Assembly (NCBI GenBank): GCA_965285935.1
Contig: OZ260661.1
Location: 60,512,001-60,576,000, forward strand
Source of the DNA: Ophelia neglecta
Taxonomy: Eukaryota
DNA: 64,000 bases
Reading direction: 5' to 3'
Part shown: positions 9,901 through 60,937 of the stretch, in pieces
How the letters are laid out: each line of letters opens with the position of its first letter
Position numbering within the stretch: position 1 is the first letter of the stretch
The notes under the pieces: model-generated
Told to the model about the DNA's origin: nothing
Seen by the model: only the letters and a program-made list of their open reading frames with translations
Databases searched by the model: none
Translations under genes and position numbers: made by a program

Positions 9901-12599
9901 CTCATCGCCATTCTTTCTGGTTATCTTCCTCTGGTTTACAGCATATCTTCTGTTATAGTTTCACTAAAAGTATATAGAATGACCATTTGACGGACAGGAC
10001 AGCAACAAACTCTTTTGTATTTGGCAATAACAATCACTCAATTTTTACGTTTAACGTCAAATGGTGGAATATTAATTGTTGTCATTTTTTATGTTTCCTC
10101 ACTAGTAGATTGTTGTAGTCGTAGTCGAGTGGGAAAGGTTCAATCAATTATGCATTCATTGCTCTTTTTTCATATGTCTGAGTCAGAAAGACGTGATGGT
10201 AGAAAGTTAGCCGATCATTATTTAATGTGATAAAAGAAGCTTTTGAGTATGTCTGATGTACATTTTCCCTTCTATATCCTTCCCACATTTGCCACCGTTG
10301 TTTCAAATGTATTTACATTTATGGCAGCTCACTTCCAAGCCAGTTGGGACTTATTTACACATGGACAAGATAATATTTTAAGATTCCTCGCCCAGGTTCT
10401 ACGGTGTCATGTCTCGGCAGGATTACAAAGGCTTGATCGGCAACATCAGGTGAAAAATGACCGCAACAATGCTCGAAGGAACAGGGTATAATGGCCGGGG
10501 TCGTCTTGGATTAGGCCTTTAAAATTAAAGCCCGATGCATCATCTTTCAGGGGAGACTCTATGACAGACCACAGACAAGAAAATTACAGATTCGCTCCCA
10601 GATCACGCCATTGCATCACTGTGCACAAAAGAAAAACGAGCGTGCCATGATTTAAAATCATCATTATTTTGTGTGATGAGGTCTATCAAATCAGCCATGA
10701 CATAGCATTTCATCAAATTTTCACGTATAAGATTCATATGATGCATTAAGCTACTGTTCGTCTTCATGGTTATCTTCTTTGGCCTTTTCTTCGCTGTCAA
10801 ACTCGATCAATTTTCAGTTGTCCGTTGTCCCAGTATTAATGAACACACGTGGATATATCATGGATGTTTACAACAACTCCTTGTGTCTAAGCAATGCGTC
10901 TACATAATGTTACATATACATGTTAACAGACAGGTTAAGTTTTTTTTATGTTGATTTTATGTTTACACTTGCCACTTGTTCCTTCCAGGAACAGTAACAT
11001 GCATAACTAATTGAGTTGATGTGTTTCACTGTGAAGAAGTAAGTGACAATAAGATGTACTTTTTTTACAATATTTTCATATTTATTGCAAGTTTAATTAC
11101 TGCCAAACATACAATTATCAATAACAATCATGTGTGGATTACAATTATAAAACTTTGATTTGCTCCTTTGGAAGCCTTTTCATTGAGAGGTTTATTCGTT
11201 ATATGGGCGATATAATATTGGCATAAATATTTATATCATGTGGTTTCATAATTTATAACACAACCTTAATCTATATATATATATATATAGGATGACCAGA
11301 AGGCAGTACAATTCATAATAATACCTGAAGAAATCATACATTTTGTTCGAATAGGAACAAAATATGATAAATTAAAAAGATGTCTTAATTAGAGACAAAT
11401 ACATGAACATCTACATTTTATAATAATTCCATGTCAACTGTGAACAAGGAGCACCACACCATGAACACCAGACCAGTGAGACAATACAAGCTTTCCATTT
11501 ACACATTTGGTTCTCTACAATCCAGTTTAACTTGACCACTAAATGTTCATGTGCACCATATAAATATTTACGAAACGTGTACAGTTTGTACACTTCGTGC
11601 ATCAGAGTTATTCATTTAAATAATTTTACAACTCTTTTGCTATCTTACATAGATATATGTTATCAGCTCACCTCTGCAGTAGGAAAAAATGCCAATCAGG
11701 ACGAGGTTCATTTTTTAAAATTGTCTTAGATTCTTCCCTTCAGTCATTGCTTAATTAAATTGGCAGCTCTTTAACTGGACACCATAACCAACACATAAAT
11801 TCTAGGCAGGTTATGTTACGATTGGCAGACTTGGCATATACTCGAATGGAAAGGAATTATTATGACAAATAATAAATAAATATTGGGAATGTAGAGTGTA
11901 AATAATTGGAATGCTCGAGATTACCCTGATCACCTAGCAATAGTTTATTTACGACAAGTCCAATGTTCAAAAAAGGATTGATTGGAAGAGCATACATGAT
12001 CCACATATCATATACACGACTTGGAAGAAAAAAGGTATGCCCATCATAGCCAGCTGACCCACACAGGGTAACTTTGTGGCAACATACGATATAGGCCTAG
12101 GCCTAACTTGTCACCGACTGTGATATAAATATGTAGGATTACATAAATACGTTTTATAATGAAGTTTCAGATCTATCATTGCAGGGGAGTGTGAACCAAA
12201 GAAGCTCGCTCAAAACTCACCAGCCAGAAACATGGCTTACATATACGGATTGTTAAACAGCAAGAAAACGGGTAAAATTGAAGTTTGGCGTAGATCAACA
12301 GTCCGTTATCTAAGTCTGCTTATCCCTTGATTAAATGGCAAGATTTTGTAAGTGAGGCGATCCGTGTCTAGTGTAAAGTGGGGCCGACGAGATTCAAAGT
12401 ATGAGCCCTCCACACTGGCTCCGGAGGCCCTCACCCATCTGGGCTGTACACACGCTTTGTGTGCGTCTTTCTCATGGAGCAGACGGACCTTGTCTTCATT
12501 CTGCATAGCGTGAAATACTAAGTGCTACAAACGCGGGAAACTGTGCTAAGTTCCCATCAGTGTTAAACTAAAATCAAGACTGGGGAAAAGCGCAATAGC

Positions 12600-13330
12600 A
12601 TTTGCCAGCTTAACACATGTCTCTCACATGGCTTGTTGGAAGATATGGAGAGACGTAGTTGACCAGGAAAAGTGGGTCTAGGTCAGGTTACGTATGGGCC
12701 ACGTGACCCTTGGTTTTCTAACACTCTGAAATATATAATCAAGTTGGAATGAATCTGTGACAATAAGTGTCATGAAGCAGTTTGCTGACTAAGAAGTTTC
12801 AAGATTCTCATATTTGACACTGAAAATAACCCAAGGGTTGCAGTTTCCCAAATCGAACGATTATGAATGCACGCCCAAAGAAGTTCCTTCACATGATTTG
12901 GGTGAATTTCATTGATCGGTAACATTTCCGCCATATTTGGAAAAGACGGAATGTTGCTCTTGGACAATAGTTGTAAAAGAATAATAATTTTAGAGAAACT
13001 GAAAAGGAAGATTGTGATAAATCCCCACAAAGGTTCCATACACCGGTTTCAAAGTGGGTGGGTCCAGAACCCACAAACCAGACGTTGAAATTGGGCATCT
13101 AAAATACGAATTCCACGAATAAGATTTCTGATGGCCGTACAAAGTATTATTTGGTTGAATCTGATAAGGAGCAGAATAATGAGTTGTAAAGCGGAATGAA
13201 TACTTTCCTGTCCACCTAACAAAAAAAAAATCTAAAACGTGACCTTGAAAATAAAGCCGAATATATCAAAAATAAAGCAGGTCTCATCTTCGATGAATTA
13301 CTTGTTTTATGAAGATAACTGTTTTAAAAA
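12600..13330. mobile_element. Possible decayed interspersed repeat (Helentron/HINE-like)
   Basis: Recurrent degenerate TTGG..TGAATCTG-like motifs (about 12741, 12895, 13148) and GTGACCTTGAAA. Resemblance only; boundaries are uncertain. Confidence 0.2.
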
Positions 13331-14890
13331 TTGTTGAGGAAGAAAGTTGGACTTGTGACTTTGAAATCAAACTACAGTTGTGGACATTTTACCAGTTTGT
13401 GACAATATTTTTAGCTGACATTTTTTACTTTCTTTTAGCGGTGCCTGAATTATTTGGCAAACCCCAAGTGGAATTCGGACGGCCACTGGTAAAAATAAAA
13501 TGTGTGTATGGTCTTCCTGGACGACATAGATAGACTCGACCTGGTTAGTTGCTTAAAATGGAAGTGGGAAAATATGTATTCACTCGGGGACGCAGAAAGA
13601 AGGAAGTACGCACATATTATATTGATAAAACAAACACTGTAGAATATATCTTGATAAATTTCCGAAGCAGAACAATCGTATTGCATTGTATGTCCGTCAT
13701 GTATGGCAAATTTAGTATAGAATACATGTGATCATATAGCAGTTTTCATTTGGGCTTCATGTCACACAAGTCGGGTGACTTTAGGTGATGTTGCCGACTG
13801 ACTGAGGATGCAGAGGAAACAGTCGACAATCAGGGGCCAGTTTTTCAAGAGCTCCTTGAAGGTCGGGGTTCAAAGCCATTACATCTGGTAGATGTTAACA
13901 GGTAAATGCGATCAGATGTCGACTTCCACCTTCAGACAAGATCCGCCCTGGGTAAACTTATCAAAGACTGTTGCCTCCGGATTGGGGACCTCAGCCGGAA
14001 TCACATTGTCAAAACTCATGATAAATGTTGTCGCCAGCCCACATAACAAGACTGCCTGCACTTTTCCCCAATTAGCCCAAGTTGGCTTTCAGTATGCCGA
14101 TTTCATTTCGCTGGGCTCGCAAAGAGGATGTTCGACTCTTTGGCTAAGTTGAGTTAAAATGGCCCCTTATAGATCCCTGCCTCCTCCAGCCCAGACTATG
14201 TTTGCTCTTATTTATCGTCTGCTTCCAGCCAAGCCTCAGAAGATTGAGTTGAAAGACGTCTATTGCCTTTTAATTTGTACAAATTGATGAATTTGGCACT
14301 GCCATCATCAGTCAAATAAACGTTAGCCCTTCATTGGACGCCAGACAAGGATATTTCAGTTTTCATACAAATGTAGGTAAACATCGTCTATATAGGTACT
14401 TACTGGCAAATACCCGTGTCCCCTATATCCTCCATACACTACACTTATAAATATGGACATGTACTTATTTTGAAGACACTGAGAAGACCTCCGCTGAAAA
14501 TCGAGAATCCTGTCTGTGAGAAATTTGAAAACCTGCCAAATTACCCTCTCTACATACCAAAATGATTACCGAAAGATTAGGCAAATTGAACAATTGCATG
14601 AGGCAAATTAACAAAGAAGTAAAACCGTGTAACCGACTTACAAACAATGCCAATGATAGGTTAATCACTTTTGGTACCGAGCTTTTGAGTTCACGTCTTG
14701 TTTGTGAATAGACGCTTAATATCATAGCTTTCAGGGGCTGGTGGTATTGAGCAATTCGTTAGTCATAAAATTAATAATCACTCACTTGACGGAACGCAAT
14801 ACTTAGTTTCATAAGTAGAAACATAGTAATTTGTGTTAAAAACTATGCAGAATGTTGTTAATTCATAAAATTATTAGATTGTCTAACATT

Positions 14891-14899
14891 TACCCTGTA
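14891..14899 (-). promoter_or_regulatory. miR-10-family 8mer target site in the putative Hox1 3'UTR
   Basis: mRNA-sense TACAGGGTA is complementary to miR-10 nt 1-9 (UACCCUGUA), about 365 nt after the stop codon. Confidence 0.55.
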
Positions 14900-15103
14900 T
14901 TGACCAACCTAGGAAACGTAACAAAATAAAAATAGGTGATTGTGTGGGAATGTACTTATCAAAAGTGTTTCTATGGTGACACCGCGACATACTTTCATAA
15001 TACACCTTATACACATATATACACACTTATTTGGATTATGCTTCAAATGATTCCTTTTGGAGCGTGCATCTACAGGAACTCGTGCTCAAGTCAGACTCCT
15101 CTT

Positions 15104-15156
15104 GATTGGACAATGATGGCCACGTGATTAAAAAAAGTTCCTCAGATGTCACGTGG
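15104..15156 (+). promoter_or_regulatory. Inverted NF-Y/USF cassette 3' of Hox1 (candidate antisense promoter)
   Basis: GATTGG 15104-15109, 11-bp spacer, CACGTG 15121-15126. Second E-box GTCACGTGG 15148-15156. Confidence 0.5.
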
Positions 15157-15262
15157 TAGGTCCGCAGAGCAGAAGTGTCCTCTGACCCCCAAACTTGACT
15201 GGATCTTTGATATGACTAGCATGACTGGAATATTTTTTTTGAAATGACTAAAAACGTATTCC

Positions 15263-15558
15263 TTAACTGTCGTCTGCTTGTAAAGAGCCATCATTAGAAC
15301 CGTCACTGTTCACGCCACTATTACCTATAACACCAGGAGATTCCTTCATGCGTTTCTTTTGCTTCATTCGACGGTTTTGAAACCAAATTTTCACTTGAGT
15401 TTCATTCAGTCCAAGGGCCGCAGCGATTTCTATTCTCCTAGCTCTTGTGAGGTATTTGTTAAAGTGAAACTCCTTTTCTAACTCAGTCAGTTGTTTGTTT
15501 GTAAAATTTGTCCTGCCCATATTTGGCTGGCCTTGGTAACCGTACTCGCCAGACTTCC
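15263..15558 (-). CDS. Hox1: Hox1/labial, coding exon 2 (homeobox 15526-15347)
   Basis: Acceptor poly-T-CAG|GG (AG at 15560-15559), phase 1 matching exon 1. Homeodomain [60 protein letters not shown] is diagnostic of paralogy group 1. Spliced CDS 966 nt = 321 aa. Confidence 0.98.
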
Positions 15559-15887
15559 CTGAAAAAAAAAATACCAAGTAAGTACTCATTGAACAAGCAA
15601 ATTTTAGATGCGTTTTTTAGATACCAAGGACTTACTAGGTTTATTTTGTTTCCATGTTTACTGATAACGGTCAAGAATATTAAAGGTGGTGTTATTTGGC
15701 TCGAAAGAAAAACATGTGCCTGAATCGTATTATTTATACAGACTACACTTTTTTTGAATAATTCAGCGTTATATTAGTACTAATATTTTGATAGTGATAG
15801 TATCATGTTAACCATCCCTATCATGCAAGTAATATTAAGGTCGATGACTTTAGGACAGGCACATATGGCCTATCCTGACCGCTAATG

Positions 15888-15901
15888 TGACCTCTTGACC
15901 T
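15888..15901 (-). promoter_or_regulatory. Perfect DR2 nuclear receptor element (AGGTCA AG AGGTCA) in the Hox1 intron
   Basis: Plus strand reads TGACCT CT TGACCT. Confidence 0.5.
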
Positions 15902-17623
15902 CGCTGCTGATGTCGGACCATCATCTATGGCACAGGTAAACGCTTTGAACTCCTGTTCTGATGCACATATGGAACATGCATGTATATATATTTAAATGAG
16001 CCCCCAGGGCTATACTTGGACGTTTACACTGTCTACTCTGTGTGCTGTGTCACCGATATGGGTTGACACGGCAATTTTGTCATTAAGGCGCCCTTTTCTG
16101 TTATTAATGAATAGGTGTGTTGTCATCAGAAGACAAACAGTGTAGTGGTAAGTCATTACCATGGCTACACCACAGGAAAATAATATTGAATATGAAATAG
16201 AGTTGCATTTTCGCATTTTATCCTATATTGAAATTTATATTGGTGTAAGTCGATATTCGCAAGATCAAATTAGGTCAATCTTTTTATAGCTTTCTTCGAT
16301 ATGTATCAATATTAGTAATTCAAATAATGGCTGAATTCGATATCCCTGTTGAATGTTCCAGGTGATAGTAATATGTGAGTAGTGTTTAAAATGATCTGTC
16401 GTAAATCTTCCATAATTGAAGCTTAATATTAAATGACCAGGAGAACCTATAAAATCAAAACTAGTATAAAACTGTCATAAATCGTCTGGTCATTAAATTA
16501 TTGTAAAAATTATGACCGGAAGTGCATAGAAGTGGACTATAAAAATGATCTAGGAGTTCTCCTCAAGCCATTAAGAATCGATTTATGTATAGGAAAGATG
16601 GAGGATTCTTGCTTGCGCAAATCTAATTGGCCTGATATAAATATTATATCCGGTCATCACAAAGGGTATCGCATAAATTTTGAATTGAGATTGTTCTAAA
16701 CAATGAACTAACTTAACTTTTGTTAAGTTCCAAAAAAGCAAAAAAAAAAAAACTAATCTTAATATCGTATCTCATTCCATAAAAATCCGATGGAACATTG
16801 GACATAGTTATTGCCAGCCTGTGCCAAAAGGACAAATAATCGGTTCATATTTCTCTGACACTGATAAATTCGTGCAAAATTGTCGAATCGCACATGAAAC
16901 AACTTCACGTAGAAGTGTTCAACTGAGATAAAAGTTAGCTGAGCGAAATAATACACTAAGCTTCCCATCTGTCAACTACCCTAATGTCTAGAGAATCATG
17001 TCACCCTGAAAATTATTAATATTAATGACATTCGTGTCTCGCTGATAATGGGGGCAAAGGAAACATCCACTATAGCAACTTCAACCAGCATTACATTCTA
17101 TTATGTTCGCATTTACTCAAAAGCAACAAAGCCTGAATCAGAAGAAATCGAACGGGACGGCTCTCGTTCGTGGAATTTCTCGGCAAATGTGCACTTTGAT
17201 TAACTTTGCCTTTGCTGGAGCATCTATGGCCATTAGCCGAGGCGTGTGGCCAACGTTATTTTGGGCCTGCCATATTAATAGTGTGGTACTCCCTCGAGGG
17301 AAAGTGGGGGGATAGGGCAATCAGTGGTAGTCCTGGTCACTACTGTTCTCTCATCATAGCTGTCTTCATCGGATGAGAATCCTGACAACATTGTGCTGAT
17401 CGCAACACAGAGCTAAATAGGGTCACTCAAAAATGTAGTTAATCAGCCATAAAACTTATATGTAGGATGAAACTGAGCAGTGCTCAGTCCACGAGTCGCT
17501 CTCTATACTCACTTAAAATATAGTTATATTTGGACATTATGGTGGGCATTTAGTGTGTGTTTGTAATGTCACCACGTATAAATTTATATAGTTCTCTCTC
17601 CAAAAAGGAGGGCTGACATATTT

Positions 17624-17654
<31 letters not shown>

Positions 17655-17670
17655 TAATTATAATAATAAT
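17624..17670. repeat. (AAT)n microsatellite, imperfect
   Basis: Direct reading. Confidence 0.9.
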
Positions 17671-20600
17671 ATGGATTATTAATGATCTACTAAAATAGTG
17701 CCATACATCTTAATTGAAATGGATGATTTCAACTTTCATAAAATGCAGACTTTATTAATTTGAATATGCGTTTCCAGGTTAAAGTCGCTTGTGTTCTGAG
17801 TTGCTTATTCCCACAATTGGTCCCATCCCATCAAATACAAAACACTTTTCCCATTGCAAAATGAATGAAAAACGGAGCTGTCATGCTTTTGCTTCCTTAA
17901 TTCATTGCAAAGTTAGTTCCATCACGACTAATACGTGCTTAATAATTAGGATATAATTAATTTTGCTCTAAGTTGCACATGTCGGTATAATTCTAGAGCC
18001 ATGTAAAGGAAATAAGAATACTGCAGTAAACATCTTCAGGGAATTTCAGGAGGCAAAATGAACATTTCGCACCTGAGTTGAGTGTATAGCCCTCGAGGAG
18101 TTGGAACAATAAGTTGGGGAATTAAACCTAAACAAATTGGAAGATTATTGAGTGAAATTTATGATATATGGCGAAGTTTTAGAAGTTGATTCATCGCTGT
18201 AGTGAAAGAAAGGCTTGCCTAGACGTGGGGGCAGAACCCAGGAGGACAGAGCTGGTCGTGAAATCTTTTTCAAAGACTGTTGGGCGAAATACTGGAGATT
18301 AGAGAAGCCATTTGAGAAACAAGTCAATTAAACGGAGTGATTAATGAGAGGTTTGTTAATTATCATCCGGCTCATCGTATTTATTACTTTAGCAAGATAT
18401 TGGGATTATGACTGATCATTCTCCTTGGAAAGAATGCTCCTTATTCCGCGAATACATGAAATAGATTTTCGCTGCGTTTAATACAAAATATATGAGATAA
18501 TTTGCTCTACTAACGGACTTAAAATAATTATTGGTGGGTAGAGTAAGTAGAAATATACCAATAAGCGTTTTTACAAGACCGTGAAATCTTAACCCATAAT
18601 TAATCTGAGCATTAATATCCGATCACTGTAGACAGTTTGAGCAACTTTAGGAACTGGACTCTCCAAATAACGAAAACAAAAATAAAAGAATTGATCACAG
18701 GGAGGTAAATCAATAGTAATTTGCTATAAAACATGGCGGCAATAGCTCGGTGCCAATCGAAAATTGAAGATCCAGGTGTCTATGCTAAATGAGATCAATT
18801 AATTTTCAATAATTTATGCAGTAGATGAACGCCACAGCCGATGGCCTATTCAGGGTAATTAGTTGGAGTGGAATTAGTTCTGTGTCGGAGGCTTTATGAG
18901 AGAAAAAAACTGACGACCACATAGAAAATGTGAAGAGTGTTATTCAACTCTGCGCCTAACTGTTAGTTTAAACATATTTATTTTTGTAAGTTGGGTCATA
19001 CAATTGATAGAAATGATTATGACAAGGGAAGAATGCATGTGGAGAGAAAGTTATAGGTATGTTTTTGCTAGTTGGATGGAAGGTTTGAAAGCCAATTAAT
19101 ATTACATCTTTAAAACTCCTTGTGAACGCTAAAGTCTTTAGACTATCATGAACATGAAAATAAAAGTCAATTACTAAAATGTTTCTTTTTTCACAATCTA
19201 TGAACCTGATACAGGTAAAATGGAAATAGAATGATACGGGTTTCGTCTGTTATTATTTTAACCCACAGGAAATTATCAATCGGAAGCCTTTAACTGCGCG
19301 CTTTATTGTGAAAGGAGTTCTAAAATTCATTTATAATTGGCAATAGCAAGCTAGCCAAACGTGACTTGTTGAAGAAATACAGTCAGCATTTTTTTCTATA
19401 AGTCAATGCTTAGTAACATTACAAAGGCATCAACTCTTTATTTTTTTTGCTAGAATTACTGTTATAGAAGCTTATTGTGCGACTGTACATAATAAATAAC
19501 ATTCAAAGGCTGGGCTAGGGTTTCAATGATAAAATCTTATTCTCATTCTAGCTCTGCCTTTGATACAAGGCAAAACCGAAGTAAGTTGCTTAACTATTAT
19601 AGAGAACGCCTCAAAGACCTGACAGTCATTTACTTTTATTGTTCAGGCAGTAGGAATGTTATATAGCATGGAACAGTGTTACGAAGACAATAAACCTGCA
19701 GACATTCTTCTCCCTCGATCAGAGTCATAAAAATATACGCCTTCATAATTTTCCATTAATATCTGGTTTTAATTATTTGAGAGAAAATGACCGTTTAATT
19801 GACTAGCTACAGTGTATTAAGATACATAGGGGATGACTCCTGTTCAGCATTGAAGTGGATGATACAAGGACACCCTGAGATAAGTTTAATTTCAGATTTT
19901 TTCGACGAGAGGGGCCAAGCCTGTTGCAGTGGAGTGTTGTTAAGAAGTTAGCTGGGGGAGTTACACCATGTAGTGCGGTATTTAGTCTATCCGACCACGT
20001 ATATAGCTAGAGACCTGTCGATGGGATTACAGCTTGATTGATATTAGTGCGTGAGATACATAGCCCTTGAGGATGATGGAGGTCACTTTAGAGATTGCCG
20101 ATGAAGGATTGTATTTCTTTCTTTGGTATGGAGAAACTTTCGGCCTAACTTCTCCATCACCTCTGCTGTCTGCAGGTGAAGAAGAACTCGTCTATTCCAA
20201 TTCTAAAGCTGTGTAATTAACTTTGTTTTTGCGGATTCTAAGACGAATAGGTGTGGCTTTTGATACGAAAACAATCCTAATCACTCTTGTTAGAAGCCTG
20301 AACAGGGTCTACTCCATTCAATGCAGCTCGCTAACATACGGGTCATTTCTGGCGTTGCTGAAAGCGACATATTTCATAGGTGTCGCCAACAACTTATAGA
20401 AAGTCTTAATCCTTTATTAGCTGACACCTCTGGCGAAAATGGTCAACACTGAGACATGGATTAACGGGTTTTATGCCTACTGAAAGCAACATTTCTCATG
20501 TGCTGTTCATTTCCTCGGCCACAGAAGATGTTTAATCCCTTGAAGTTGACACCTAGCTTTTTAGCAGACACGAATTTGCAGTTTCTGGTTTTGCTGAAAG

Positions 20601-23559: not shown

Positions 23560-24229
23560 CTGTTTTCGGCGTACTTCGTTTGACTGTCATCCATTTGTAT
23601 GTTGTTGTTGGGGGTCCCTGATCATGTGTGGGGCTGGAGGAAAGTCCTTGGGAGGAGCACAACACCCCGTAACCCGCCGCTGTGCCTGGGGAGTTACACA
23701 TGATGGGGTTACAGTCCGAGTGGTCAGGGTAGCACGAGGAGGGGTAGCCAGAATTGGGCATGCCATGGTGTGGGGGCATATCAGGGAGGGTACCGTTCAT
23801 TCCCATGTTTCCTGGGGGTCCGTAGTACGGAGGGTAGGGAGCCTGTCCGTGGTGTTGGGCTCCGTTATGACCCGTACCCCCTCCACAGGCAGCTCCTGGG
23901 TGTAGTCCGTAGGCAGTAGGTGCCTGCTGGTTAACTCCGTTGCCGTGGCTCAGCACTCCGTTTCCCGTGGTCTCGTAGCCCATGGGCGGGCCCTGCTGGT
24001 GGCCACCGGTCAGGTCCTGTAGCCCGGCGGATCCGTGGTGATGTCCCGGGTGCATGCCAGCCCCTGCCCCTGGGCCAGGCCCTCCGTACCCGTAATGCTG
24101 TCCGGTGTCAACCAGACCATTGTTTACGTTAGAGTAACTATAATTCGAGGTGGAAATAGACTCCGGATAGCTTGTGCTGTAAGTATTATTGTCCAAGTTA
24201 CATATCGTGTACTCTCCGTTCGAATTCAT
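23560..24229 (-). CDS. Hox1: Hox1/labial, coding exon 1 (N-terminal domain and hexapeptide)
   Basis: ORF MNSNGEYTICN... (resembles the HoxB1 N-terminal EYPLCN), G/P/H/Y-rich, with the labial-type hexapeptide TYKWM followed by TVKR. Donor ACAG|GTGAGA, intron starting at 23559. Exon is 670 nt (phase 1). Confidence 0.95.
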
Positions 24230-34824: not shown

Positions 34825-36048
34825 TTTATTACAATAAATTAATCCACAGTTAAGAACATAATAATTATGAAAATACACAAGTTCTCCCTGGACACAATAA
34901 TTATGTACACTCTTTGATATGTATACAGGAACACATACACATAAGACGAACAAATGACAAGTATTTCACAATTCACTACTATTTAAAGTGAAATATTTAG
35001 ATGTGCTTTCCAGATTGCAAATAAATAATCAAGTCGAAAAGACCATACTGGAATATTCCATCCTGCTTCAGTGATATTAACAGGTCGTCTGCTCGGTCGC
35101 CAGCAGGTGCAAGAGAAATGTATTGTACTAAACACGCAAGAAGTTTCAGCGCAGGCCTACCTTTTGTTTCAATCGATAGAGGGCACATGTCAACACATAC
35201 TACTTCGGTGTCGGCCATCAAACTCCGCATGAGAGAGGCGCATGCAACTCAAAATGTGCCAGTGGTTAAAATATGATCATTTGCCATTGATGCAGTTTAG
35301 CTTTGTTGGCACTTCTAGTAGGTAATGGTGATAATCATTTTACTTGCATTGTACCATACATTATAATCCGGCTCCTTGAATAAACATACATGTAGTGCAA
35401 GTTACAACCATTTCATGACCAAATATGCATATTAAGGCTACAAAAACCAGTCTTAAAATGTGTCATGCTGTTTATTTTGACAATAAGCCTCGTGCATTAA
35501 CAACGTATGTGCTTATTATGTTTATGCCTATAATAAAATACAAAAAATGAAACTTGAAGTCTATTTGTTGAGATAAATGTTTCAATCATACATACAATTG
35601 ATGTCAGTAAAATTTCAGGAACAGTTGTACCTCTAGCTGCACACACCAAAATTAAGAGTGGGGGAGATTATACAGCTAAAAAATCACTTTTACCGGGCGG
35701 CAAAGATAGTGCATTAAGTTAACATGATATCACATGGTGCATTTGACCTCCAGACCACGTACAACAATGCATTTATTGGAAATAGCCATTTCCATCTAAG
35801 ATTTATCTACTTGTCACACACAAATTATAACATTATTGGATTTTATATGAAATATTAGAATATTCAATATCACTCTCCACTCGAGCCCCAATTTACCCTG
35901 CTTTTGAATAATAAAAAGTGTATTCGTTGATGGTTAAATGCATGAATAAATTATATCAATTGGAATATATATTTAACCTGGTTTGTTTGCTGTGTTTACA
36001 TACACTGGCCAATCATTTTGAGAATAATTTACATTTTTTTGCTTTATG
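34825..36048 (-). other. Putative Hox2 3'UTR with candidate poly(A) signals
   Basis: AT-rich; AATAAA on the minus strand at 35772-35777, 35471-35476 and 34825-34830. The true end is not determinable from sequence. Confidence 0.45.
35894..35900 (-). promoter_or_regulatory. miR-10-family 7mer-A1 site in the putative Hox2 3'UTR
   Basis: mRNA-sense CAGGGTA about 150 nt after the stop, upstream of the first AATAAA I found (35772-35777). Confidence 0.4.
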
Positions 36049-38177
36049 TTATATAGACATGGTGTAATATTCGGCATTTTCTTGAAGATCGCTAGCAAAA
36101 TTACCGAAGTCAGCATTCATTAGATCTGTGGCGCTCATATTACTGAAGTCTGGCATGTTGAAAGTCGAGCAATAGTCCATAGAGTGGCTCTCTGTGTAGT
36201 CGACATTTGTGTTAGCGGTCACTGAGGCTGTATTTAAAGCGGCATTGGTCTGAAAATGTTCACTTCTATGTTGGTCCTCAGCCCCGATCCTGTTGACCGG
36301 ATCAGAAGGGGAGTTGTCAGGATAAAAGGCCCCGTTCACATGTCCAATACTGTATTGACCATTGCTGTCACTGTAGCTATTGATGGAATTAGCCGGCCCG
36401 CTCATTGAAATCTGTGGATAGTTACCCGTAGTTTGGTTATGGTCGTAACCCTGTTGAATTTCAGAGCGTTCTATAGCGGTGTCCCCCTGGCCCCCAGCAG
36501 GTTGGGGGTAGGCCCCTGGGTCAGGGACCATTGCCGGGTACCCCCGAGATTGAAGAGCATGGCCTGCCATTCCACGTTGCTGCTGGCCGTGGGGGTACGA
36601 CATATTGTGGGCATTTGCAATTTGAAACCCAGAACCTCTAGAATTGGTTTGCGAATATTGCCTTGGCATCTGGTTTTGTTGTGCTTGATGTTGATGTGGG
36701 TAGTAGCGATTGTTTACATACTGAGCTAGAGCGGCGGAGTCAGCCACGTAGCCATGTGTATCATTTTGACCAGGATATTGATGCTGGTACATTGGGTGAT
36801 TGGTCTGCACTTCGTTACCATGGCTACCAGCCATTGGGTCCTGCGGCAAGCTATTGACCATGTCCATACTGACATTGATGCCATTTCGTGCTGCGCTAGT
36901 GTTTCTCATCATGGGCGGTGGGCCAGTGTCGTCTGCTCGAATAAAGTTATGTGCTCCGCTAGATGGCGATGTCAGAGGCAAATTTCGAGTAGGCAGCGAG
37001 TGCCTGAAGTTTGCCTGATGTTTTACCGTGGTATTTGACTGAGCATACTCAGTCGGTCCCTGGAGAGGTGCGTGTTGAGGGTTGTATGTGTCAAACTCAC
37101 GACGAAAGCCGTTCGTAGGTTGGTAGCCCATTGGAGGCGGGACATTAGCGTGCATCATTTGCCCGTGAGTGAAGCCAGGGTATCTGTTGGTACCCATTGC
37201 TCCCTGGCCCACAGCGACATTGGGAGGGGGGATCCGACCAGATGTGAGCCCTGGGGAGGAATGACTGGGGGCCGTCGAAGCCTGAAGGGCCTGGGGAGAT
37301 TTTTGCTGGGGCTGTGGAAAAGGTTGCTGAGAGGAGGCTTTAGAATGCATGGGACTTTTAGTTGGTTTCTGCCCATCACATTTACCCATGTCTACAATCT
37401 CTGATTCACCAGCTGCTTTGATCTCTAACGAAGCTTCTGTTCTTCCTTCATTGTTCTTTGTGTTCCCTGATTGAGATTTATTGTTGTTCTCTGAATCAAC
37501 CGTTGAGTCAGCGTTAGCTTTTACTTGGCAGGCATTTCCTTCGGGAGTAAAGTCTCTTTTGTCTGAGACGGCCCCGTCCGAGTCGGTGTAATTCACCGGT
37601 TCCGACTTAACACAGTCTCTTTCATTTAGTTCTGTACTCCCCGACGTTGAATTATTTGTGCCAGTATTGAACGACTCTGTTGACATACGGGAGTCCTCCT
37701 CGGATTTATTTGATTCCGATGGCTCTGAGATAGCCGCCACGCTGGCTGTGTTCTCACCTGCCGAGTCCTCCTGGTATTTATCCAGGGGGTCTGCCATGTC
37801 CCCGAGGGGACTCTTACTGTCCTCCCCTCCGGGGTGTGTACTGCTGTCCACCGCCGGGGAGGGGGAGGCAATGCTGCCCTCTCCCTCCTCCCCTGAGCCC
37901 ATGCCAACACCGCCCCTCTCTTCCTCTCCCTTGTTGCTCGTCTGCCTCTTATACTTCATCCGCCTGTTCTGGAACCATACTTTCACCTGTCTCTCCGTCA
38001 GATCCAGCGAGGCAGCTATCTCTATTCTCCGGGGCCGGCAGAGGTATTTGTTAAAGTGGAATTCTTTCTCCAATTCTAGCAGCTGAGTATTTGTGTAGGC
38101 AGTTCGCAGTCGCCGGGGATGGCTCGAGCCGCTGCCGCTGCCACCGCCATCCGTTGTCGACTGTCCCTCGGGGAAAT
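36049..38177 (-). CDS. Hox2: Hox2/proboscipedia, coding exon 2 (homeobox 38118-37939 plus long C-terminal tail)
   Basis: Pyrimidine tract plus TAG|AT acceptor (AG at 38179-38178). Homeodomain [60 protein letters not shown] is PG2. Frame open to TAA at 36051-36049. Spliced CDS 2454 nt = 817 aa. Confidence 0.98.
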
Positions 38178-57175: not shown

Positions 57176-60140
57176 TTTATTGAAACATATTTCATATTTA
57201 CAGCAACAATATAAAGCTAATATTTTACTTTAGGATGGAATGAGAACATAAATGCTTATTGCTTTTTTCAGTAAATAATTATAAATAATATTTAATGATG
57301 CTGATGGAGAGCGTACATTTTTATTGATAGCCGATGTTTTAGCATTAATCCCGGTATAATCAAGTGTTCAGGATCGTTGTAATAATGATAGTTCTACGTT
57401 GAAATAGGATATTTATTATTTTGTTGTAGGGGTATATATTTTTATATTCAAATAAATGTCATACCCGTTAGTATATATATATATGGTATGGGGATATCAT
57501 TAAAATAAAACTTTCGATTGTATCATATTATTTAAACATACTATATATATATTTATATATATATGTGTGTTTAGTATGTATTTTAATCAAACTTTTAGAG
57601 TATTCAAATTGCTTTTTTTAAATTGTACGTGGTTTAAGGAATAAATTTTAATTACTTAAGGTTTGTTTTTGTTTACTTTTACAGTGTAAATGAAATAAGT
57701 TGTCTTTTTAAACACAAGTAAATTACATCATAGAGATAACAACAAGAAATCATTTTGTTGGTCTAATATTTAATACTACAAAACACACATTGTACATGGA
57801 TACAGCCGTTAATCTTATTGTGATTTTAGGACAAATATGAAATCTCAACTTTCAATATCCGACGCCGTCTTTAAATAAAATACTAATCTCCTTTTGGTGT
57901 ATCACTTTCCAAGAAAAATGGTGGATTTCTAATATCCGCGCCACTTGTATTACTATGTCGTCTGCTACCCTAATAATATATCTACAATAAAGCTCATTCT
58001 AATTGACATTTTCAAAATATAATATACATATATTATTTACATGATATTTTACTCTCAACATGTTTACAGTTAATTTCAAAGTTCACAATGAACTATCAAC
58101 TCCATTCCACTAGTATGTGACCAATAATTAAAATCTTGTACGCAAAATGCCTTCAATGCAATATATCATTAACACCTAGAAATACATTTCTTAACATCAG
58201 ACTGCGAGAGATCTGAGTGCTGCGAAAAATATCTAGAATTTCCATCTAAACTTTACATTATTGCTGGCAAGAATATGGCAGCTGAATTGTTTGTCTCCGC
58301 ACCGAGTAAGGTGAAACATATTACTAAATATATACTATTACAAATTCAGGTATGCTTCAAGTTTTGCGCCTAAAACAGACGTTTAAAATTGTCCATTGTT
58401 CATATTCTGCGCATACTTGAAGCGACTTGAAATGGTAAGTTAAGATAAACGATATAGTGTACCCGTAAAATCCCGTTTAGCAACAATATTTATAAAATGT
58501 ATACTCTGAAATGTTCCGACTATTTTACTCTTACAACAAACACACAGTGGACACTAGAAAAATTAAGTAAGGAGTGCACATACATTTTTGAACTAATACA
58601 AACTCATGACAATGCCACGTGAACTATTGTTATTTCTTTACAAATTTCATCCAAATACTATCTGCTAATGCACAGGTTTTAGCAAGATTGGGTCCAGTAA
58701 GTTAAAAGAGAATCTTCATAAAAGTTGACCCTCTCTGGACGGCTGGCAAAAGAACAAAGAAAAACATTATAAAGAACAAAACCACAGGTGAATAAAGTAA
58801 TAAAACTACGATCAAACATATGGAGAAGGCATTACTGAGTGACCCCTAGCAACCTGCTATTGGAAGTCAAATTCCAAGCACAGCTAAGCTAGTTACAGGA
58901 GGCACTATAGGGCCATATAAAGTTCTTAACTGTATCTATTTGCATATTTTCAATTGGAAATCACTGCACCGTAATTTTGCATTGGTCTGTCATAGTGGAC
59001 GATTTCTGAATAAGACAGTTTTATGACCCTTGGTTAAAAGTTTTTCTTCACACCTGCAAGCCTGCCAAGATTAAACGGTGAAAGCGGCTGAATGGGCCAC
59101 CTGAAGACCGCGGTGCTAATAAAGAAGGCAAGTTCAAGAGACCTTTATAGTTTCTGGTACTGCCTATAGGCACTTATTGGCTCCTGCTGCGGTGAATACA
59201 CAATGGCAGGCAGTGGTCAGTAGCTATAAAGTTAAAATGACGAGCTTTCTTTTCAACTAGCACTCAAGTAGGCACCTCGCACGGGCCCCTATGTAGTTAT
59301 CTTAATTATATCTGGCTTGCAATTCGCAACTAGTTAATAGGTGTATACTAAGGGAACCAGCGATACAATTGTAATACTTTGTTAGAATACCATATTGCAC
59401 CTGTCAAGATGGAGCTTGAAGTTTACACATAAAACAATGCTAATATTCTAAGTTGTATTTAACACAAAAAGGGCAAGAAATGCAGGTATCATTGGATTTA
59501 AAAATCAGATCTATAAACCGGCAGTAAAATAAATTTACTGACAATTAACACGGAGTAGCATTTAACAGACGCCATTTAACACAATATTCTCATAACAATT
59601 AATCACTACACTAAGCAGCGAATTAGCCAGGGTTAATAAAGTGGGCTCCCATTGAAATTCCAGCTTATCAAAATACAACTTTTCAGAAGTTAAATATCAG
59701 AATAATCTCTCAATATTTTCCTTTTTGTCTTTCAGTTGTATCACCATGTTATATTTTTCAGTTGTTCTTCCAACTGCCTCTTTTAATAAATATTTCAAAT
59801 TTTGATATTTTTCACCATTTTCTCAAGTTTTGTCGACCCTGTATAAGGCATCTCAAATTATACATTGAGATAGCAGAAGAAAACAGAAACAGCTCGTTAC
59901 TACAGACCATCTCACTTCGTAGGCATCGAGCTGCTATAACAACATAGGCCTATCACTTAGCCCGCCACCACGGACAACGAATTAAGTACACACAATATGA
60001 TATATCATAGCACTATCAAATCAGCACACTTTTAAACAATTATGCCCATTCTATATTTTAGAAAATCCCTGCTGCATTTAATGTATATTGCGCCGGCGCT
60101 TGCGCAGATGTTGTACTGAAATCTGCCGCCAATGAACTTC
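57176..60140 (-). other. Putative long (about 3 kb) Hox3 3'UTR
   Basis: AT-rich tract with Pumilio-type TGTANATA motifs (57195, 57979, 58034) and miRNA seeds. Cluster of minus-strand AATAAA near 57176-57420. Confidence 0.4.
59836..59912 (-). promoter_or_regulatory. miRNA target module in the putative Hox3 3'UTR (miR-10/993-5p seed, miR-124 seed, miR-993-3p-like extended site)
   Basis: Plus strand ACCCTGTA 59836-59843, TAAGGCA 59844-59850 and AGCTCGTTACTACAGACCATCT 59891-59912. Confidence 0.5.
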
Positions 60141-60937
60141 TCATAAATGGGTTAGTTTTGGCGCAGGATTGTAGTTTCCCTGAGTATAATTCATTTTGTC
60201 CATTGAACACAAGTTGATATTGGGCGGTAGATGTAAGGGAAGAGACATCCCTTGACCGTTGATGTAATGTTGAGGGTTGGGTGAAGGGGTGTGGGGGTTG
60301 TGACACCCCATAGGAGATCCCGTTCTACCGTAATCGAGCGGGCTGGCACTCGCTTGGTGGCGCTGTAAGTGAAGGGGTGAGTTGCCCTCTAATGGTGACA
60401 TCTTGTGTGACATATTGGGTGGCGACTGACCCATATTTGGAGATTGCAGTTCTGATGACGTAGAAGAGGTGTGGTGGGGATAATTGGGTCGTTGGGCGCC
60501 ATATCCGCTATCACCATGGCCTGATGACGCATGATGACCCTGAACCCCACCGGATGTGGACAGAGGTGACGTCACCGGCGACGCTAGTGATGATTGGTCA
60601 TCCTCCGAGGAGGTGGAGCCATTACCGGATGTGGCGCTCGACGACCCTTTAATGCTATCCACTGATTGGTCAGTCAGCTGCCTCGTCACATCCCCACCCA
60701 TTTGCTTCTCTAACAACTGCTTCTGTTTCTGATCCTTCTTATATCTCATCCTCCGGTTTTGGAACCAAATTTTGATCTGTCTCTCGGTGAGATTGAGAAC
60801 TGCCGCCATTTCAATTCGGCGCGGACGACAAAGGTAACGGTTAAAGTGAAACTCTTTTTCTAGTTCCACAAGTTGAGCGCTGGTATAAGCTGTTCTCGCC
60901 CGCTTTGACGGCTGCTGGTTTGACTCGGCGTAGCCAT
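60141..60937 (-). CDS. Hox3: Hox3, coding exon 2 (homeobox 60908-60729)
   Basis: Acceptor TTTTCAG|AT (AG at 60939-60938). Homeodomain [60 protein letters not shown] and the C-terminal APKLTHL* motif are both diagnostic of PG3. Confidence 0.98.

What the first reader, a model, noticed from the sequence alone, without database searches (positions are those of the whole stretch)
14891..14899. miR-10 seed sites downstream of all three anterior Hox genes (Hox1 site: nt 1-9 match)
Seen: mRNA-sense TACAGGGTA about 365 nt after the Hox1 stop, CAGGGTA about 150 nt after the Hox2 stop and TACAGGGT about 300 nt after the Hox3 stop. The Hox1 and Hox3 sites fit both the U-start and the 1-nt-shifted miR-10 seeds. 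A hand estimate for the 8-mer is about 0.5% per 400 nt. Known: miR-10 is encoded within bilaterian Hox clusters and represses hoxb1a and hoxb3a in zebrafish. Inference: miR-10 repression of anterior Hox genes (a post-transcriptional form of posterior prevalence) is shared with this protostome and may be ancestral to bilaterians.
Basis: partly seen in the sequence, partly recalled or inferred. Interest (0 to 1): 0.75.

Follow-up and report, generated by a model that had tools for sequence, protein, structure and literature searches.

The report
miR-10-family sites behind Hox1 and Hox2
The short motifs behind the worm's Hox1 and Hox2 genes are real and probably docking sites for a shifted version of the Hox-cluster microRNA miR-10, while the Hox3 motif could easily be chance.

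Summary
The genome's own miR-10 lies between Hox4 and Scr and has the expected 5' end.

Hox1 and Hox2 share the 10-mer CAGGGUAAAU. Its core, AGGGUAA/GGGUAAA, is the word that earlier reports of this scan found in arrays behind Scr and Antp of the same genome. I confirmed both arrays and found a third behind a Lox2-like gene. Over ten Hox genes the count is 27 sense to 2 antisense.

The core fits a miR-10-family microRNA that starts 2 nt (or 1 nt) upstream of canonical miR-10. A candidate hairpin lies beyond Post2, where miR-1991 is published.

Canonical miR-10 sites that do not overlap this word number 2 sense (Hox3, Lox5) and 2 antisense, which is background.

No RNA data exist, so UTR membership rests on poly(A) signals. 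In 16 other labial-type loci there is no enrichment; one contig keeps a similar block. Ancestry across bilaterians is not supported.

The parts
14888..14899 (-). Hox1 site, mRNA sense TACAGGGTAAAT. It is an 8-mer for canonical miR-10 (ACAGGGTA), an 8-mer for a +1 start (CAGGGTAA) and an 8-mer for a +2 start (AGGGTAAA). It begins 364 nt after the stop.
14541..14547 (-). Second Hox1 site, AGGGTAA, 716 nt after the stop. It is a 7mer-m8 for the seed UUACCCU.
35891..35900 (-). Hox2 site, CAGGGTAAAT, 149 nt after the stop. It is a 7mer-A1 for canonical miR-10 and an 8-mer for the +1 and +2 starts.
59836..59843 (-). Hox3 site, TACAGGGT followed by C, 298 nt after the stop. It is a 7mer-m8 for canonical miR-10 only. 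This class of site is at background frequency across the cluster.
15263..15558 (-). Hox1 exon 2 (homeodomain), stop TAA at 15265-15263. The best solved-structure match is HOXB1.
23560..24229 (-). Hox1 exon 1, containing TYKWM, with a GT donor at 23559-23558.
36049..38073 (-). Open frame of Hox2 exon 2 (homeodomain plus a long tail), stop TAA at 36051-36049. It holds an in-frame ACAGGGT at 36454-36448.
60141..60869 (-). Open frame of Hox3 exon 2 (homeodomain), stop TGA at 60143-60141.
14269..14274 (-). First canonical poly(A) hexamer after the Hox1 stop (ATTAAA, +989). Both Hox1 sites lie upstream of it.
35772..35777 (-). First AATAAA after the Hox2 stop (+272), 116 nt beyond the site.
59782..59787 (-). 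ATTAAA at +354 after the Hox3 stop, about 50 nt beyond the site. Another ATTAAA at +59 (60077-60082) lies upstream of the site and would exclude it if used.

Best explanation
The Hox1 element (TACAGGGUAAAU, plus a second AGGGUAA 350 nt further on) and the Hox2 element (CAGGGUAAAU) are most likely 3'UTR target sites for miR-10-family microRNAs encoded in the same Hox cluster.

The register that best fits them, and the arrays behind Scr, Antp and the Lox2-like gene, is a mature RNA starting 5'-UUUACCCU, 2 nt upstream of canonical miR-10. A start 1 nt upstream, as published for Mir-10-P5, is the second-best fit.

The most likely source is the hairpin at C1:61102323-61102381 (L110), beyond the Post2-like gene, where miR-1991 is published. 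Argonaute loaded with this RNA would pair by its seed and reduce Hox1 and Hox2 mRNA stability or translation wherever the posterior microRNA is expressed. That would be a post-transcriptional form of posterior prevalence.

The Hox1 site is also a perfect canonical miR-10 8-mer, so it may be read by both RNAs. The Hox3 site is a lone canonical 7mer-m8 and is as likely chance as function.

Shown: the motifs, their strand bias, the hairpins and their folds. Inferred: UTR membership, the mature 5' end, expression and repression.
For: Sites and distances:
- Positions and distances are as stated.
- Hox1 and Hox2 share the 10-mer CAGGGTAAAT.

Ten-gene table, 1.5 kb after each stop:
- Sites for the seed UUACCCU number 27 sense (Hox1 2, Hox2 1, Scr 10, Antp 6, Lox4-like 1, Lox2-like 7) and 2 antisense.
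- Background predicts 1.7 per strand.
- By type they are 11 8-mers, 9 7mer-m8 and 7 7mer-A1.
- The 8-mer AGGGTAAA within 400 nt of the stop in at least 2 of the 7 genes without arrays has P = 0.0012.

Hairpins:
- UUUACCCU is present in three cluster hairpins: miR-10 (L004), L027 and L110.
- L110 folds at -45.1 kcal/mol (z = -5.1), with GUUUACCCUG inside an 11-bp stem above a 9-bp basal stem.

Literature:
- miR-1991 belongs to the miR-10 family, may be seed-shifted, and lies between Post2 and Post1 (PMC3394115 and PMC4138081, passages).
- Mir-10-P5 starts 1 nt 5' of the ancestral cut (PMC12257675, passage).

Other support:
- No AATAAA or ATTAAA lies before the Hox1 and Hox2 sites.
- Contig L029 keeps GGTCAA-N-ACAGGGT 447 nt after its labial stop, plus AGGGTAAAT at 381.
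Against: - No RNA run exists for this organism. The three runs are DNA. So the 3'UTR ends, microRNA expression and the mature 5' end are all unobserved.
- L110 and L027 get no Rfam match at E <= 1.
- Post1 was not located, so 'between Post2 and Post1' is not shown.
- The published shift for Mir-10-P5 is +1, not +2.
- Cross-species support is weak. In 16 other labial-type loci, AGGGTAA is on the sense strand in 2 of 16 within 400 nt (0.32 expected). ACAGGGT is in 2 of 16 sense and 2 of 16 antisense within 1 kb.
- In 49 mixed Hox loci there are 12 sense and 8 antisense clusters, P = 0.25.
- The closest labial exon (L031, 82%) has no ACAGGGT or CAGGGTA in its first 3 kb.
- The L029 flank similarity is modest: blastn E = 0.037; 121 of 2000 flank shuffles and 32 of 3000 random anchor pairs do as well.
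- Hox1 and Hox2 carry one or two sites each, not arrays.
Confidence: 0.55

Rival explanations
1. One reading: canonical miR-10 (5'-UACCCUGU), encoded between Hox4 and Scr, is the regulator of all three anterior Hox genes, as in zebrafish.
For: - Canonical miR-10 is present on the Hox strand.
- Hox1 carries a full 8-mer with nt 1-9 paired. Hox3 has a 7mer-m8 and Hox2 a 7mer-A1.
- 280 of 262,144 9-mers do as well.
- Both the Hox1 and the Hox2 core are preceded by C, P = 0.03.
- Zebrafish hoxb1a and hoxb3a are repressed by miR-10, and vertebrates show a Hox1-3 target bias.
- L029 keeps ACAGGGT at a similar distance.
Against: - Canonical sites that do not overlap the AGGGTAA core are 2 sense and 2 antisense over ten genes.
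- C before the core in 6 of 20 sites, and AC in 3 of 20, is not above base frequency (P = 0.11 and 0.08).
- The Hox2 site is the weakest canonical type.
- Hox3 has an ATTAAA at +59, before its site.
- There is no enrichment of ACAGGGT behind 16 other labial genes.
Confidence: 0.2
2. Chance: the three motifs are unselected words in AT-rich sequence downstream of the genes.
For: - The window as a whole is not enriched.
- A lone ACAGGGT within 1 kb has P = 0.043 per gene, and the antisense strand shows as many.
- There is no broad conservation.
- The window lengths and the word family were partly chosen after seeing the data.
Against: - The 8-mer AGGGTAAA, a word specified by independent findings in Scr and Antp, lies within 400 nt of both the Hox1 and the Hox2 stop. 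P is 5.8e-5 for the pair and 0.0012 after allowing for 7 genes.
- The shared 10-mer.
- The 27:2 strand bias of the family.
Confidence: 0.18
3. The AGGGUAA(A) word is read by something other than a microRNA, such as an RNA-binding protein on the mRNA or a DNA-binding factor. Its match to miR-10-family 5' ends would then be coincidental.
For: - No small-RNA evidence exists for a +1 or +2 start in this organism.
- The Antp copies extend to GGGTAAAT in 6 of 6. The final T is not what a microRNA seed rule predicts.
Against: - The strict strand bias (27:2) argues against a DNA element.
- The word is the exact complement of a stretch present at the 5' arm of three hairpins in the same cluster.
- Its split into 8-mer, 7mer-m8 and 7mer-A1 (11, 9 and 7) is typical of seed sites.
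Confidence: 0.07

Closest known systems
miR-10 repression of hoxb1a and hoxb3a in zebrafish (Woltering and Durston 2008, PMC2148072), and the vertebrate bias of miR-10 sites to Hox1-3 (PMC3394115)
   Same: A Hox-cluster miR-10-family RNA has seed matches in the transcripts of more anterior Hox genes on the same strand. Hox4, next to miR-10, has none here.
   Different: Here the best-fitting seed is shifted 1-2 nt. The Hox3 evidence is at background. Nothing is tested experimentally. Zebrafish HoxB3 sites are associated with the ORF.
miR-1991 / Mir-10-P5 and the other annelid Hox-cluster Mir-10-P1 paralogues (PMC12257675, PMC6160089, PMC4138081, PMC3394115)
   Same: Extra miR-10 copies lie in the cluster: L005, L027 and L110 here. 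One lies beyond Post2. The literature describes a 5' seed shift.
   Different: The passages I read describe the microRNA genes and name no Hox targets. The site spectrum here predicts a +2 start where +1 is published. L110 gets no Rfam match.
miR-196 to Hoxb8/Hoxa7 and iab-4/iab-8 to Ubx/abd-A (posterior-prevalence microRNAs; reviewed in PMC3394115)
   Same: A posteriorly encoded cluster microRNA has multiple sites in more anterior Hox 3'UTRs. L110 folds on both strands, as iab-4/iab-8 does.
   Different: It is a different microRNA family origin: a seed-shifted miR-10 duplicate. Near-perfect complementarity or cleavage is not shown.
Conserved miR-10-5p sites in insect Scr 3'UTRs (Lemons et al. 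2012, PMC3290615, supplementary figure legend read)
   Same: Scr carries miR-10-family sites here too: 2 canonical 8-mers within a 10-site array.
   Different: In Drosophila no major embryonic effect on Hox targets was found (title and abstract listing). The array here is of the shifted word.

Membership tests
Canonical miR-10 (Mir-10-P1) target site | Watson-Crick match to microRNA nt 2-8 and/or nt 2-7 plus A opposite nt 1 | tested here: met
   Hox1 is an 8-mer, Hox3 a 7mer-m8 and Hox2 a 7mer-A1, against the genome's own miR-10 sequence.
Canonical miR-10 (Mir-10-P1) target site | The microRNA is encoded in the same genome | tested here: met
   A hairpin lies at C1:60685996-60686064 (-). RF00104 scores 35 bits, below the gathering score of 47.5. 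The fold is -34.2 kcal/mol, z = -4.25. It holds the full canonical 5' arm.
Canonical miR-10 (Mir-10-P1) target site | The site lies in the 3'UTR of the mature mRNA | tested here: inconclusive
   No RNA runs exist. No AATAAA or ATTAAA lies before the Hox1 and Hox2 sites. Hox3 has an ATTAAA at +59, before its site.
Canonical miR-10 (Mir-10-P1) target site | Enrichment or conservation above background | tested here: not met
   Sites that do not overlap the AGGGTAA core are 2 sense and 2 antisense over ten genes. ACAGGGT is in 2 of 16 sense and 2 of 16 antisense in other labial loci. One suggestive block is in L029.
Canonical miR-10 (Mir-10-P1) target site | Seed-dependent repression | not testable with these tools
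   This needs reporters, CLIP or knock-down.
Seed-shifted miR-10 paralogue (miR-1991 / Mir-10-P5-like) target site | Seed match to a 5'-extended miR-10-type RNA | tested here: met
   Hox1 and Hox2 are 8-mers for both the UUACCCUG and the UUUACCCU starts. Hox1 has a second 7-mer.
Seed-shifted miR-10 paralogue (miR-1991 / Mir-10-P5-like) target site | A hairpin with that sequence in the Hox cluster at the published position | tested here: inconclusive
   The L110 hairpin lies 22 kb 5' of the Post2-like homeobox and folds well. Post1 was not located. There is no Rfam match.
Seed-shifted miR-10 paralogue (miR-1991 / Mir-10-P5-like) target site | The mature 5' end is 1-2 nt upstream of the canonical cut | not testable with these tools
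   No small-RNA data exist. The end is inferred from the site-type spectrum and from stem geometry (the 11-bp Drosha rule is recalled).
Seed-shifted miR-10 paralogue (miR-1991 / Mir-10-P5-like) target site | Sense-strand enrichment in target UTRs | tested here: met
   27 sense and 2 antisense against 1.7 expected per strand.
Seed-shifted miR-10 paralogue (miR-1991 / Mir-10-P5-like) target site | Conservation in orthologous UTRs | tested here: inconclusive
   AGGGTAA is on the sense strand in 2 of 16 other labial loci within 400 nt (L029, L031) and on the antisense strand in 0 of 16, with 0.32 expected. Orthologous Hox2 UTRs were not obtained.
Hox1 / labial gene | Labial-type homeodomain, a hexapeptide exon, and position at the 3' end of a collinear cluster | tested here: met
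   The best PDB match is HOXB1 at 8e-30. Pfam Homeodomain matches. TYKWM is in exon 1. Ten collinear homeoboxes lie on one strand.

The most novel reading that the evidence does not exclude
One posterior Hox-cluster microRNA, a miR-10 duplicate whose start slid 2 nt (5'-UUUACCCU, candidate hairpin L110, miR-1991-like), holds seed sites in half of the cluster: Hox1, Hox2, Scr, Antp and Lox2.

It would be the spiralian counterpart of miR-196 and iab-4. That would mean a microRNA layer of posterior prevalence was built independently a third time, here by seed-shifting.

The Hox1 site would be a dual-register site read by both miR-10 and the shifted paralogue. It has extra pairing to the 3' half of the L110 RNA.
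Probability: 0.3. Interest if true: 0.75.

Novelty: new member of a known kind. Interest (0 to 1): 0.5.

Why it matters
Hox-cluster microRNAs that dampen more anterior Hox genes are established in vertebrates (miR-10, miR-196) and flies (iab-4/8). For spiralians, the papers I found describe only the microRNA genes.

If the Hox1 and Hox2 sites are real members of the AGGGUAA(A) set, an annelid would show how duplicating miR-10 and sliding its start creates a new regulator of Hox genes.

The prediction is concrete. It specifies a mature RNA starting UUUACCCU, and named sites to mutate. This makes the idea testable in Platynereis, Capitella or this species.

Tried and rejected
RNA evidence. The look-up of sequencing runs listed no RNA run. 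Read laying showed that X1-X3 are DNA: contigs cover the intron, exon 2 and the 3' region alike, and no listed difference falls at 14888-14899. Twelve differences were not shown.

Orthologous UTRs.
- The genome-contig scan with Hox3 exon 2 found nothing.
- No usable Hox2 or Hox3 orthologue with a real stop from a near relative was among the 80 metagenome loci.

Hairpin searches.
- Rfam at gathering score found nothing in 144 kb.
- BLAST of the hairpins against the own genome gave only self hits.
- The pattern hit at C1:61368256 is not a hairpin. The one at C1:62101414 is not either. The one at C8:19193559 was read but not folded.

Pairing beyond the seed. Extra 3' pairing of the Hox1 site with L110 was matched by 10 to 22 of 1000 shuffles. 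That is the best of 15 microRNA-site pairs (21 rows, because L110 was tried in three registers), so it is not significant after correction. No extra pairing was seen for miR-10 at any site.

Register -1. The Drosophila-type start gives only the same Hox1, Hox3 and Lox5 places.

Supplements of the cited papers (microRNA tables, and Figure 1 and Figure 5C sequences) were not seen. They may give the mature miR-1991 / Mir-10-P5 sequence, which bears on +1 versus +2.

Spliced models were searched exon by exon.

Full report
OBSERVATION

The window holds three minus-strand Hox genes in collinear order.
- Hox1: exon 1 at 24229-23560 with TYKWM; homeobox exon at 15558-15263.
- Hox2: hexapeptide exon ORF at 47738-47328; homeobox exon ORF at 38073-36049.
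- Hox3: 63977-63600 and 60869-60141.

All three homeobox exons match Pfam Homeodomain. The Hox1 exon's best solved-structure match is HOXB1 at 8e-30. The names Hox2 and Hox3 rest on gene order and on homeodomain residues that I recall as diagnostic.

The motifs are exactly as described.
- TACAGGGTA at 14899-14891, 364 nt after the Hox1 stop.
- CAGGGTA at 35900-35894, 149 nt after the Hox2 stop.
- TACAGGGT at 59843-59836, 298 nt after the Hox3 stop.

IS IT MORE THAN CHANCE?

The words are not enriched in the window at large. Their placement is unusual.
- Of all 262,144 9-mers, 280 (0.11%) have one of their three 7-mers in each of the three 400-nt windows after the stops. With 1000-nt windows the number is 2,429 (0.93%).
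- In 1-kb windows the per-word Poisson P for Hox1-3 is 0.0008 to 0.02 against local background.

For a microRNA named in advance this is moderate evidence. A handful of alternative cluster microRNAs and the free choice of window length weaken it by about an order of magnitude.

THE MICRORNAS OF THIS GENOME

The window is C1:60512001-60576000 of a 762-Mb assembly. Ten homeoboxes lie on the minus strand from 60.527 to 61.080 Mb. In order they are Hox1, Hox2, Hox3, Hox4, Scr, Lox5, Antp, a Lox4-like, a Lox2-like and a Post2-like gene. The last three names come from recalled signatures.

The hairpins I found:
- Canonical miR-10 lies between Hox4 and Scr on the Hox strand.
- A miR-993-like hairpin lies between Hox3 and Hox4. 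It scores best on the plus strand.
- Three further miR-10-type hairpins lie at 60781445 (L005, behind Antp), 60893925 (L027) and 61102323-381 (L110, about 22 kb on the 5' side of the Post2-like homeobox).

L110 folds at -45.1 kcal/mol (z = -5.1) and almost as well on the other strand. L005 matches Rfam mir-10 weakly. L027 and L110 get no match at E <= 1.

The literature fits this picture.
- Annelid clusters carry mir-10, mir-993, mir-10b, mir-10c and mir-1991 (PMC6160089, passage).
- miR-1991 lies between Post2 and Post1 in oyster, limpet and Capitella (PMC4138081, passage).
- miR-1991 may be seed-shifted (PMC3394115, passages).
- In Platynereis, Mir-10-P5 starts one nt 5' of the ancestral cut (PMC12257675, passage).

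THE TWIST

Hox1 and Hox2 share more than the miR-10 seed match. Both read CAGGGTAAAT.

Two earlier reports of this scan, on other DNA of the same genome, described arrays of AGGGTAA behind Scr (s1-739806) and of GGGUAAAU behind Antp (s1-740732). I checked both.
- Scr has 10 AGGGTAA between +389 and +1215.
- Antp has 6 GGGTAAAT on the sense strand and none on the antisense strand.

I also found a third array behind the Lox2-like gene: 7 sites between +730 and +1275.

I classified every site in the 1.5 kb after each of the ten stops.
- The seed UUACCCU (an RNA starting UUUACCCU) has 27 canonical sites on the sense strand and 2 on the antisense strand. Background predicts 1.7 per strand.
- By gene the sense sites are Hox1 2, Hox2 1, Scr 10, Antp 6, Lox4-like 1 and Lox2-like 7.
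- By type they are 11 8-mers, 9 7mer-m8 and 7 7mer-A1, an ordinary mix for seed sites.
- With a +1 start (UUACCCUG) the count is 20 to 0. All of those are 8-mers or 7mer-A1, and none is a 7mer-m8 alone. That is less natural.

The Hox1 and Hox2 sites are 8-mers in both registers.

This word was specified by independent findings. The chance that its 8-mer lies within 400 nt of the stop in at least two of the seven genes without arrays is 0.0012.

The stretch UUUACCCU is present in the 5' arms of miR-10, L027 and L110, but not of L005 or the 993-like hairpin. In L110 it sits inside a perfect 11-bp stem above a 9-bp basal stem. A cut about 11 bp from the base would fall there. This rule is recalled and was not tested here.

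WHAT IS LEFT FOR CANONICAL MIR-10?

Over the ten genes there are 8 sense and 2 antisense canonical sites. Six of the eight are simply AGGGTAA sites that happen to be preceded by C.
- C precedes 6 of 20 AGGGTAA sites, and AC precedes 3 of 20. This is not more than base frequencies predict (P = 0.11 and 0.08).
- The sites that owe nothing to the shifted word are Hox3 (+299) and Lox5 (+1053). That is two sense against two antisense.

Taken alone, P is 0.017 for 400 nt and 0.043 for 1 kb.

Both the Hox1 and the Hox2 core are preceded by C (P = 0.03). Hox1 is a perfect miR-10 8-mer, so dual reading of Hox1 is not excluded.

ARE THE SITES IN UTRS?

No RNA run is on record for this organism. The three runs that hold the stretch are DNA. 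Their contigs cover the intron, exon 2 and the 3' region alike. No listed difference falls in the site, though 12 differences were not shown.

By poly(A) hexamers:
- Hox1 has none before ATTAAA at +989.
- Hox2 has AATAAA at +272, 116 nt beyond its site.
- Hox3 has ATTAAA at +59 and at +354, so its site could be excluded from the mRNA.

This is inference only.

CONSERVATION

A metagenome scan with Hox1 exon 2 returned 80 Hox loci of unnamed animals. Of these, 22 are labial-type with a stop and 16 have at least 400 nt downstream.

In these 16 loci:
- ACAGGGT occurs within 1 kb in 2 on the sense strand (L029, L032) and 2 on the antisense strand.
- AGGGTAA occurs within 400 nt in 2 on the sense strand (L029, L031) and 0 on the antisense strand, with 0.32 expected.

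Over 49 mixed Hox loci, family clusters are 12 sense and 8 antisense (P = 0.25).

L029 is the one suggestive case.
- The best local alignment between its 3' region and the window's falls exactly on the site: GGTCAA-N-ACAGGGT, at +447 against +364.
- The support is modest: blastn E = 0.037; 121 of 2000 flank shuffles and 32 of 3000 random anchor pairs score as well.
- It also has AGGGTAAAT at +381.

The closest labial exon, L031 (82% identity), has only AGGGTAA at +86, and two CAGGGTAAA at +3139 and +3227.

No usable Hox2 or Hox3 orthologues were obtained. So there is no support for a site conserved across annelids, let alone across bilaterians. Site turnover could hide a conserved interaction.

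MECHANISM

The most likely mechanism (0.55) is as follows. Hox1 and Hox2 mRNAs carry seed sites for a 5'-shifted miR-10-family RNA made from the posterior part of the cluster. L110 is the best candidate source. 5' isomiRs of miR-10 or L027 are alternatives. Argonaute binding there lowers mRNA stability or translation where the microRNA is expressed.

The Hox1 site can also be read by canonical miR-10. All predicted targets lie anterior to L110, and the adjacent Post2-like gene has none. This matches the posterior-prevalence logic described for miR-196 and iab-4.

NOVELTY

The kind is known: Hox-cluster microRNAs targeting Hox UTRs. The annelid miR-10 paralogues are published as genes.

My five paper searches and the passages I read named no Hox targets for them in lophotrochozoans. 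Supplements were closed and may hold target lists or mature sequences.

The scan had already reported the same word behind Scr and Antp. This report adds four things:
- Hox1 and Hox2 as members of the set.
- A Lox2-like array.
- The ten-gene table.
- A candidate source hairpin.

It also demotes the Hox3 site.

Noticed in passing
L113 (G000:C1:61052200-61054400), minus strand: The Lox2-like gene has 7 sense-strand AGGGTAA/GGGTAAA sites 730-1275 nt after its stop and 1 antisense. This is a third array besides Scr and Antp.
   Followed up: partly
L110 (G000:C1:61102240-61102470): A near-palindromic hairpin about 22 kb on the 5' side of the Post2-like homeobox. Both strands fold (-45.1 and -43.8 kcal/mol) and both 5' arms hold GUUUACCCUG, so it may be read in both directions as iab-4/iab-8 is. 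It gets no Rfam match.
   Followed up: partly
window 14909-14920 (minus strand), about 10 nt upstream of the Hox1 site: ACGTTTCCTA pairs with the 3' half of the L110 5' arm, which gives seed plus 11 further pairs (-25.5 kcal/mol). It was matched by 10 to 22 of 1000 shuffles and is the best of 15 microRNA-site pairs, so it is only a lead.
   Followed up: partly
window 36448-36454 (minus strand): A canonical miR-10 7mer-m8 (ACAGGGT) lies inside the Hox2 coding exon. Vertebrate HoxB3 sites are also associated with the ORF.
   Followed up: no
window 11919-11928 (minus strand): CAGGGTAATC lies 3.3 kb after the Hox1 stop on the sense strand. The related contig L031 has two CAGGGTAAA at a similar distance (+3139, +3227), each behind ACGCTGGT.
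   Followed up: partly
L002 (G000:C1:60625019-60625096): The miR-993-like hairpin between Hox3 and Hox4 scores better on the plus strand, opposite to the Hox genes: 35.9 against 21 bits, and -40 against -33.6 kcal/mol. Its plus-strand 5' arm shares the canonical miR-10 seed.
   Followed up: no
window 13000-18000: Runs X2 and X3, filed under one sample with X1, differ from the assembly at many places in the Hox1 intron and 3' region, while X1 does not. This is probably a second haplotype or individual.
   Followed up: no
window 7080-7094 (minus strand): A tandem GGGGTAAAGGGTAAAG lies about 8 kb downstream of Hox1 on the sense strand.
   Followed up: no
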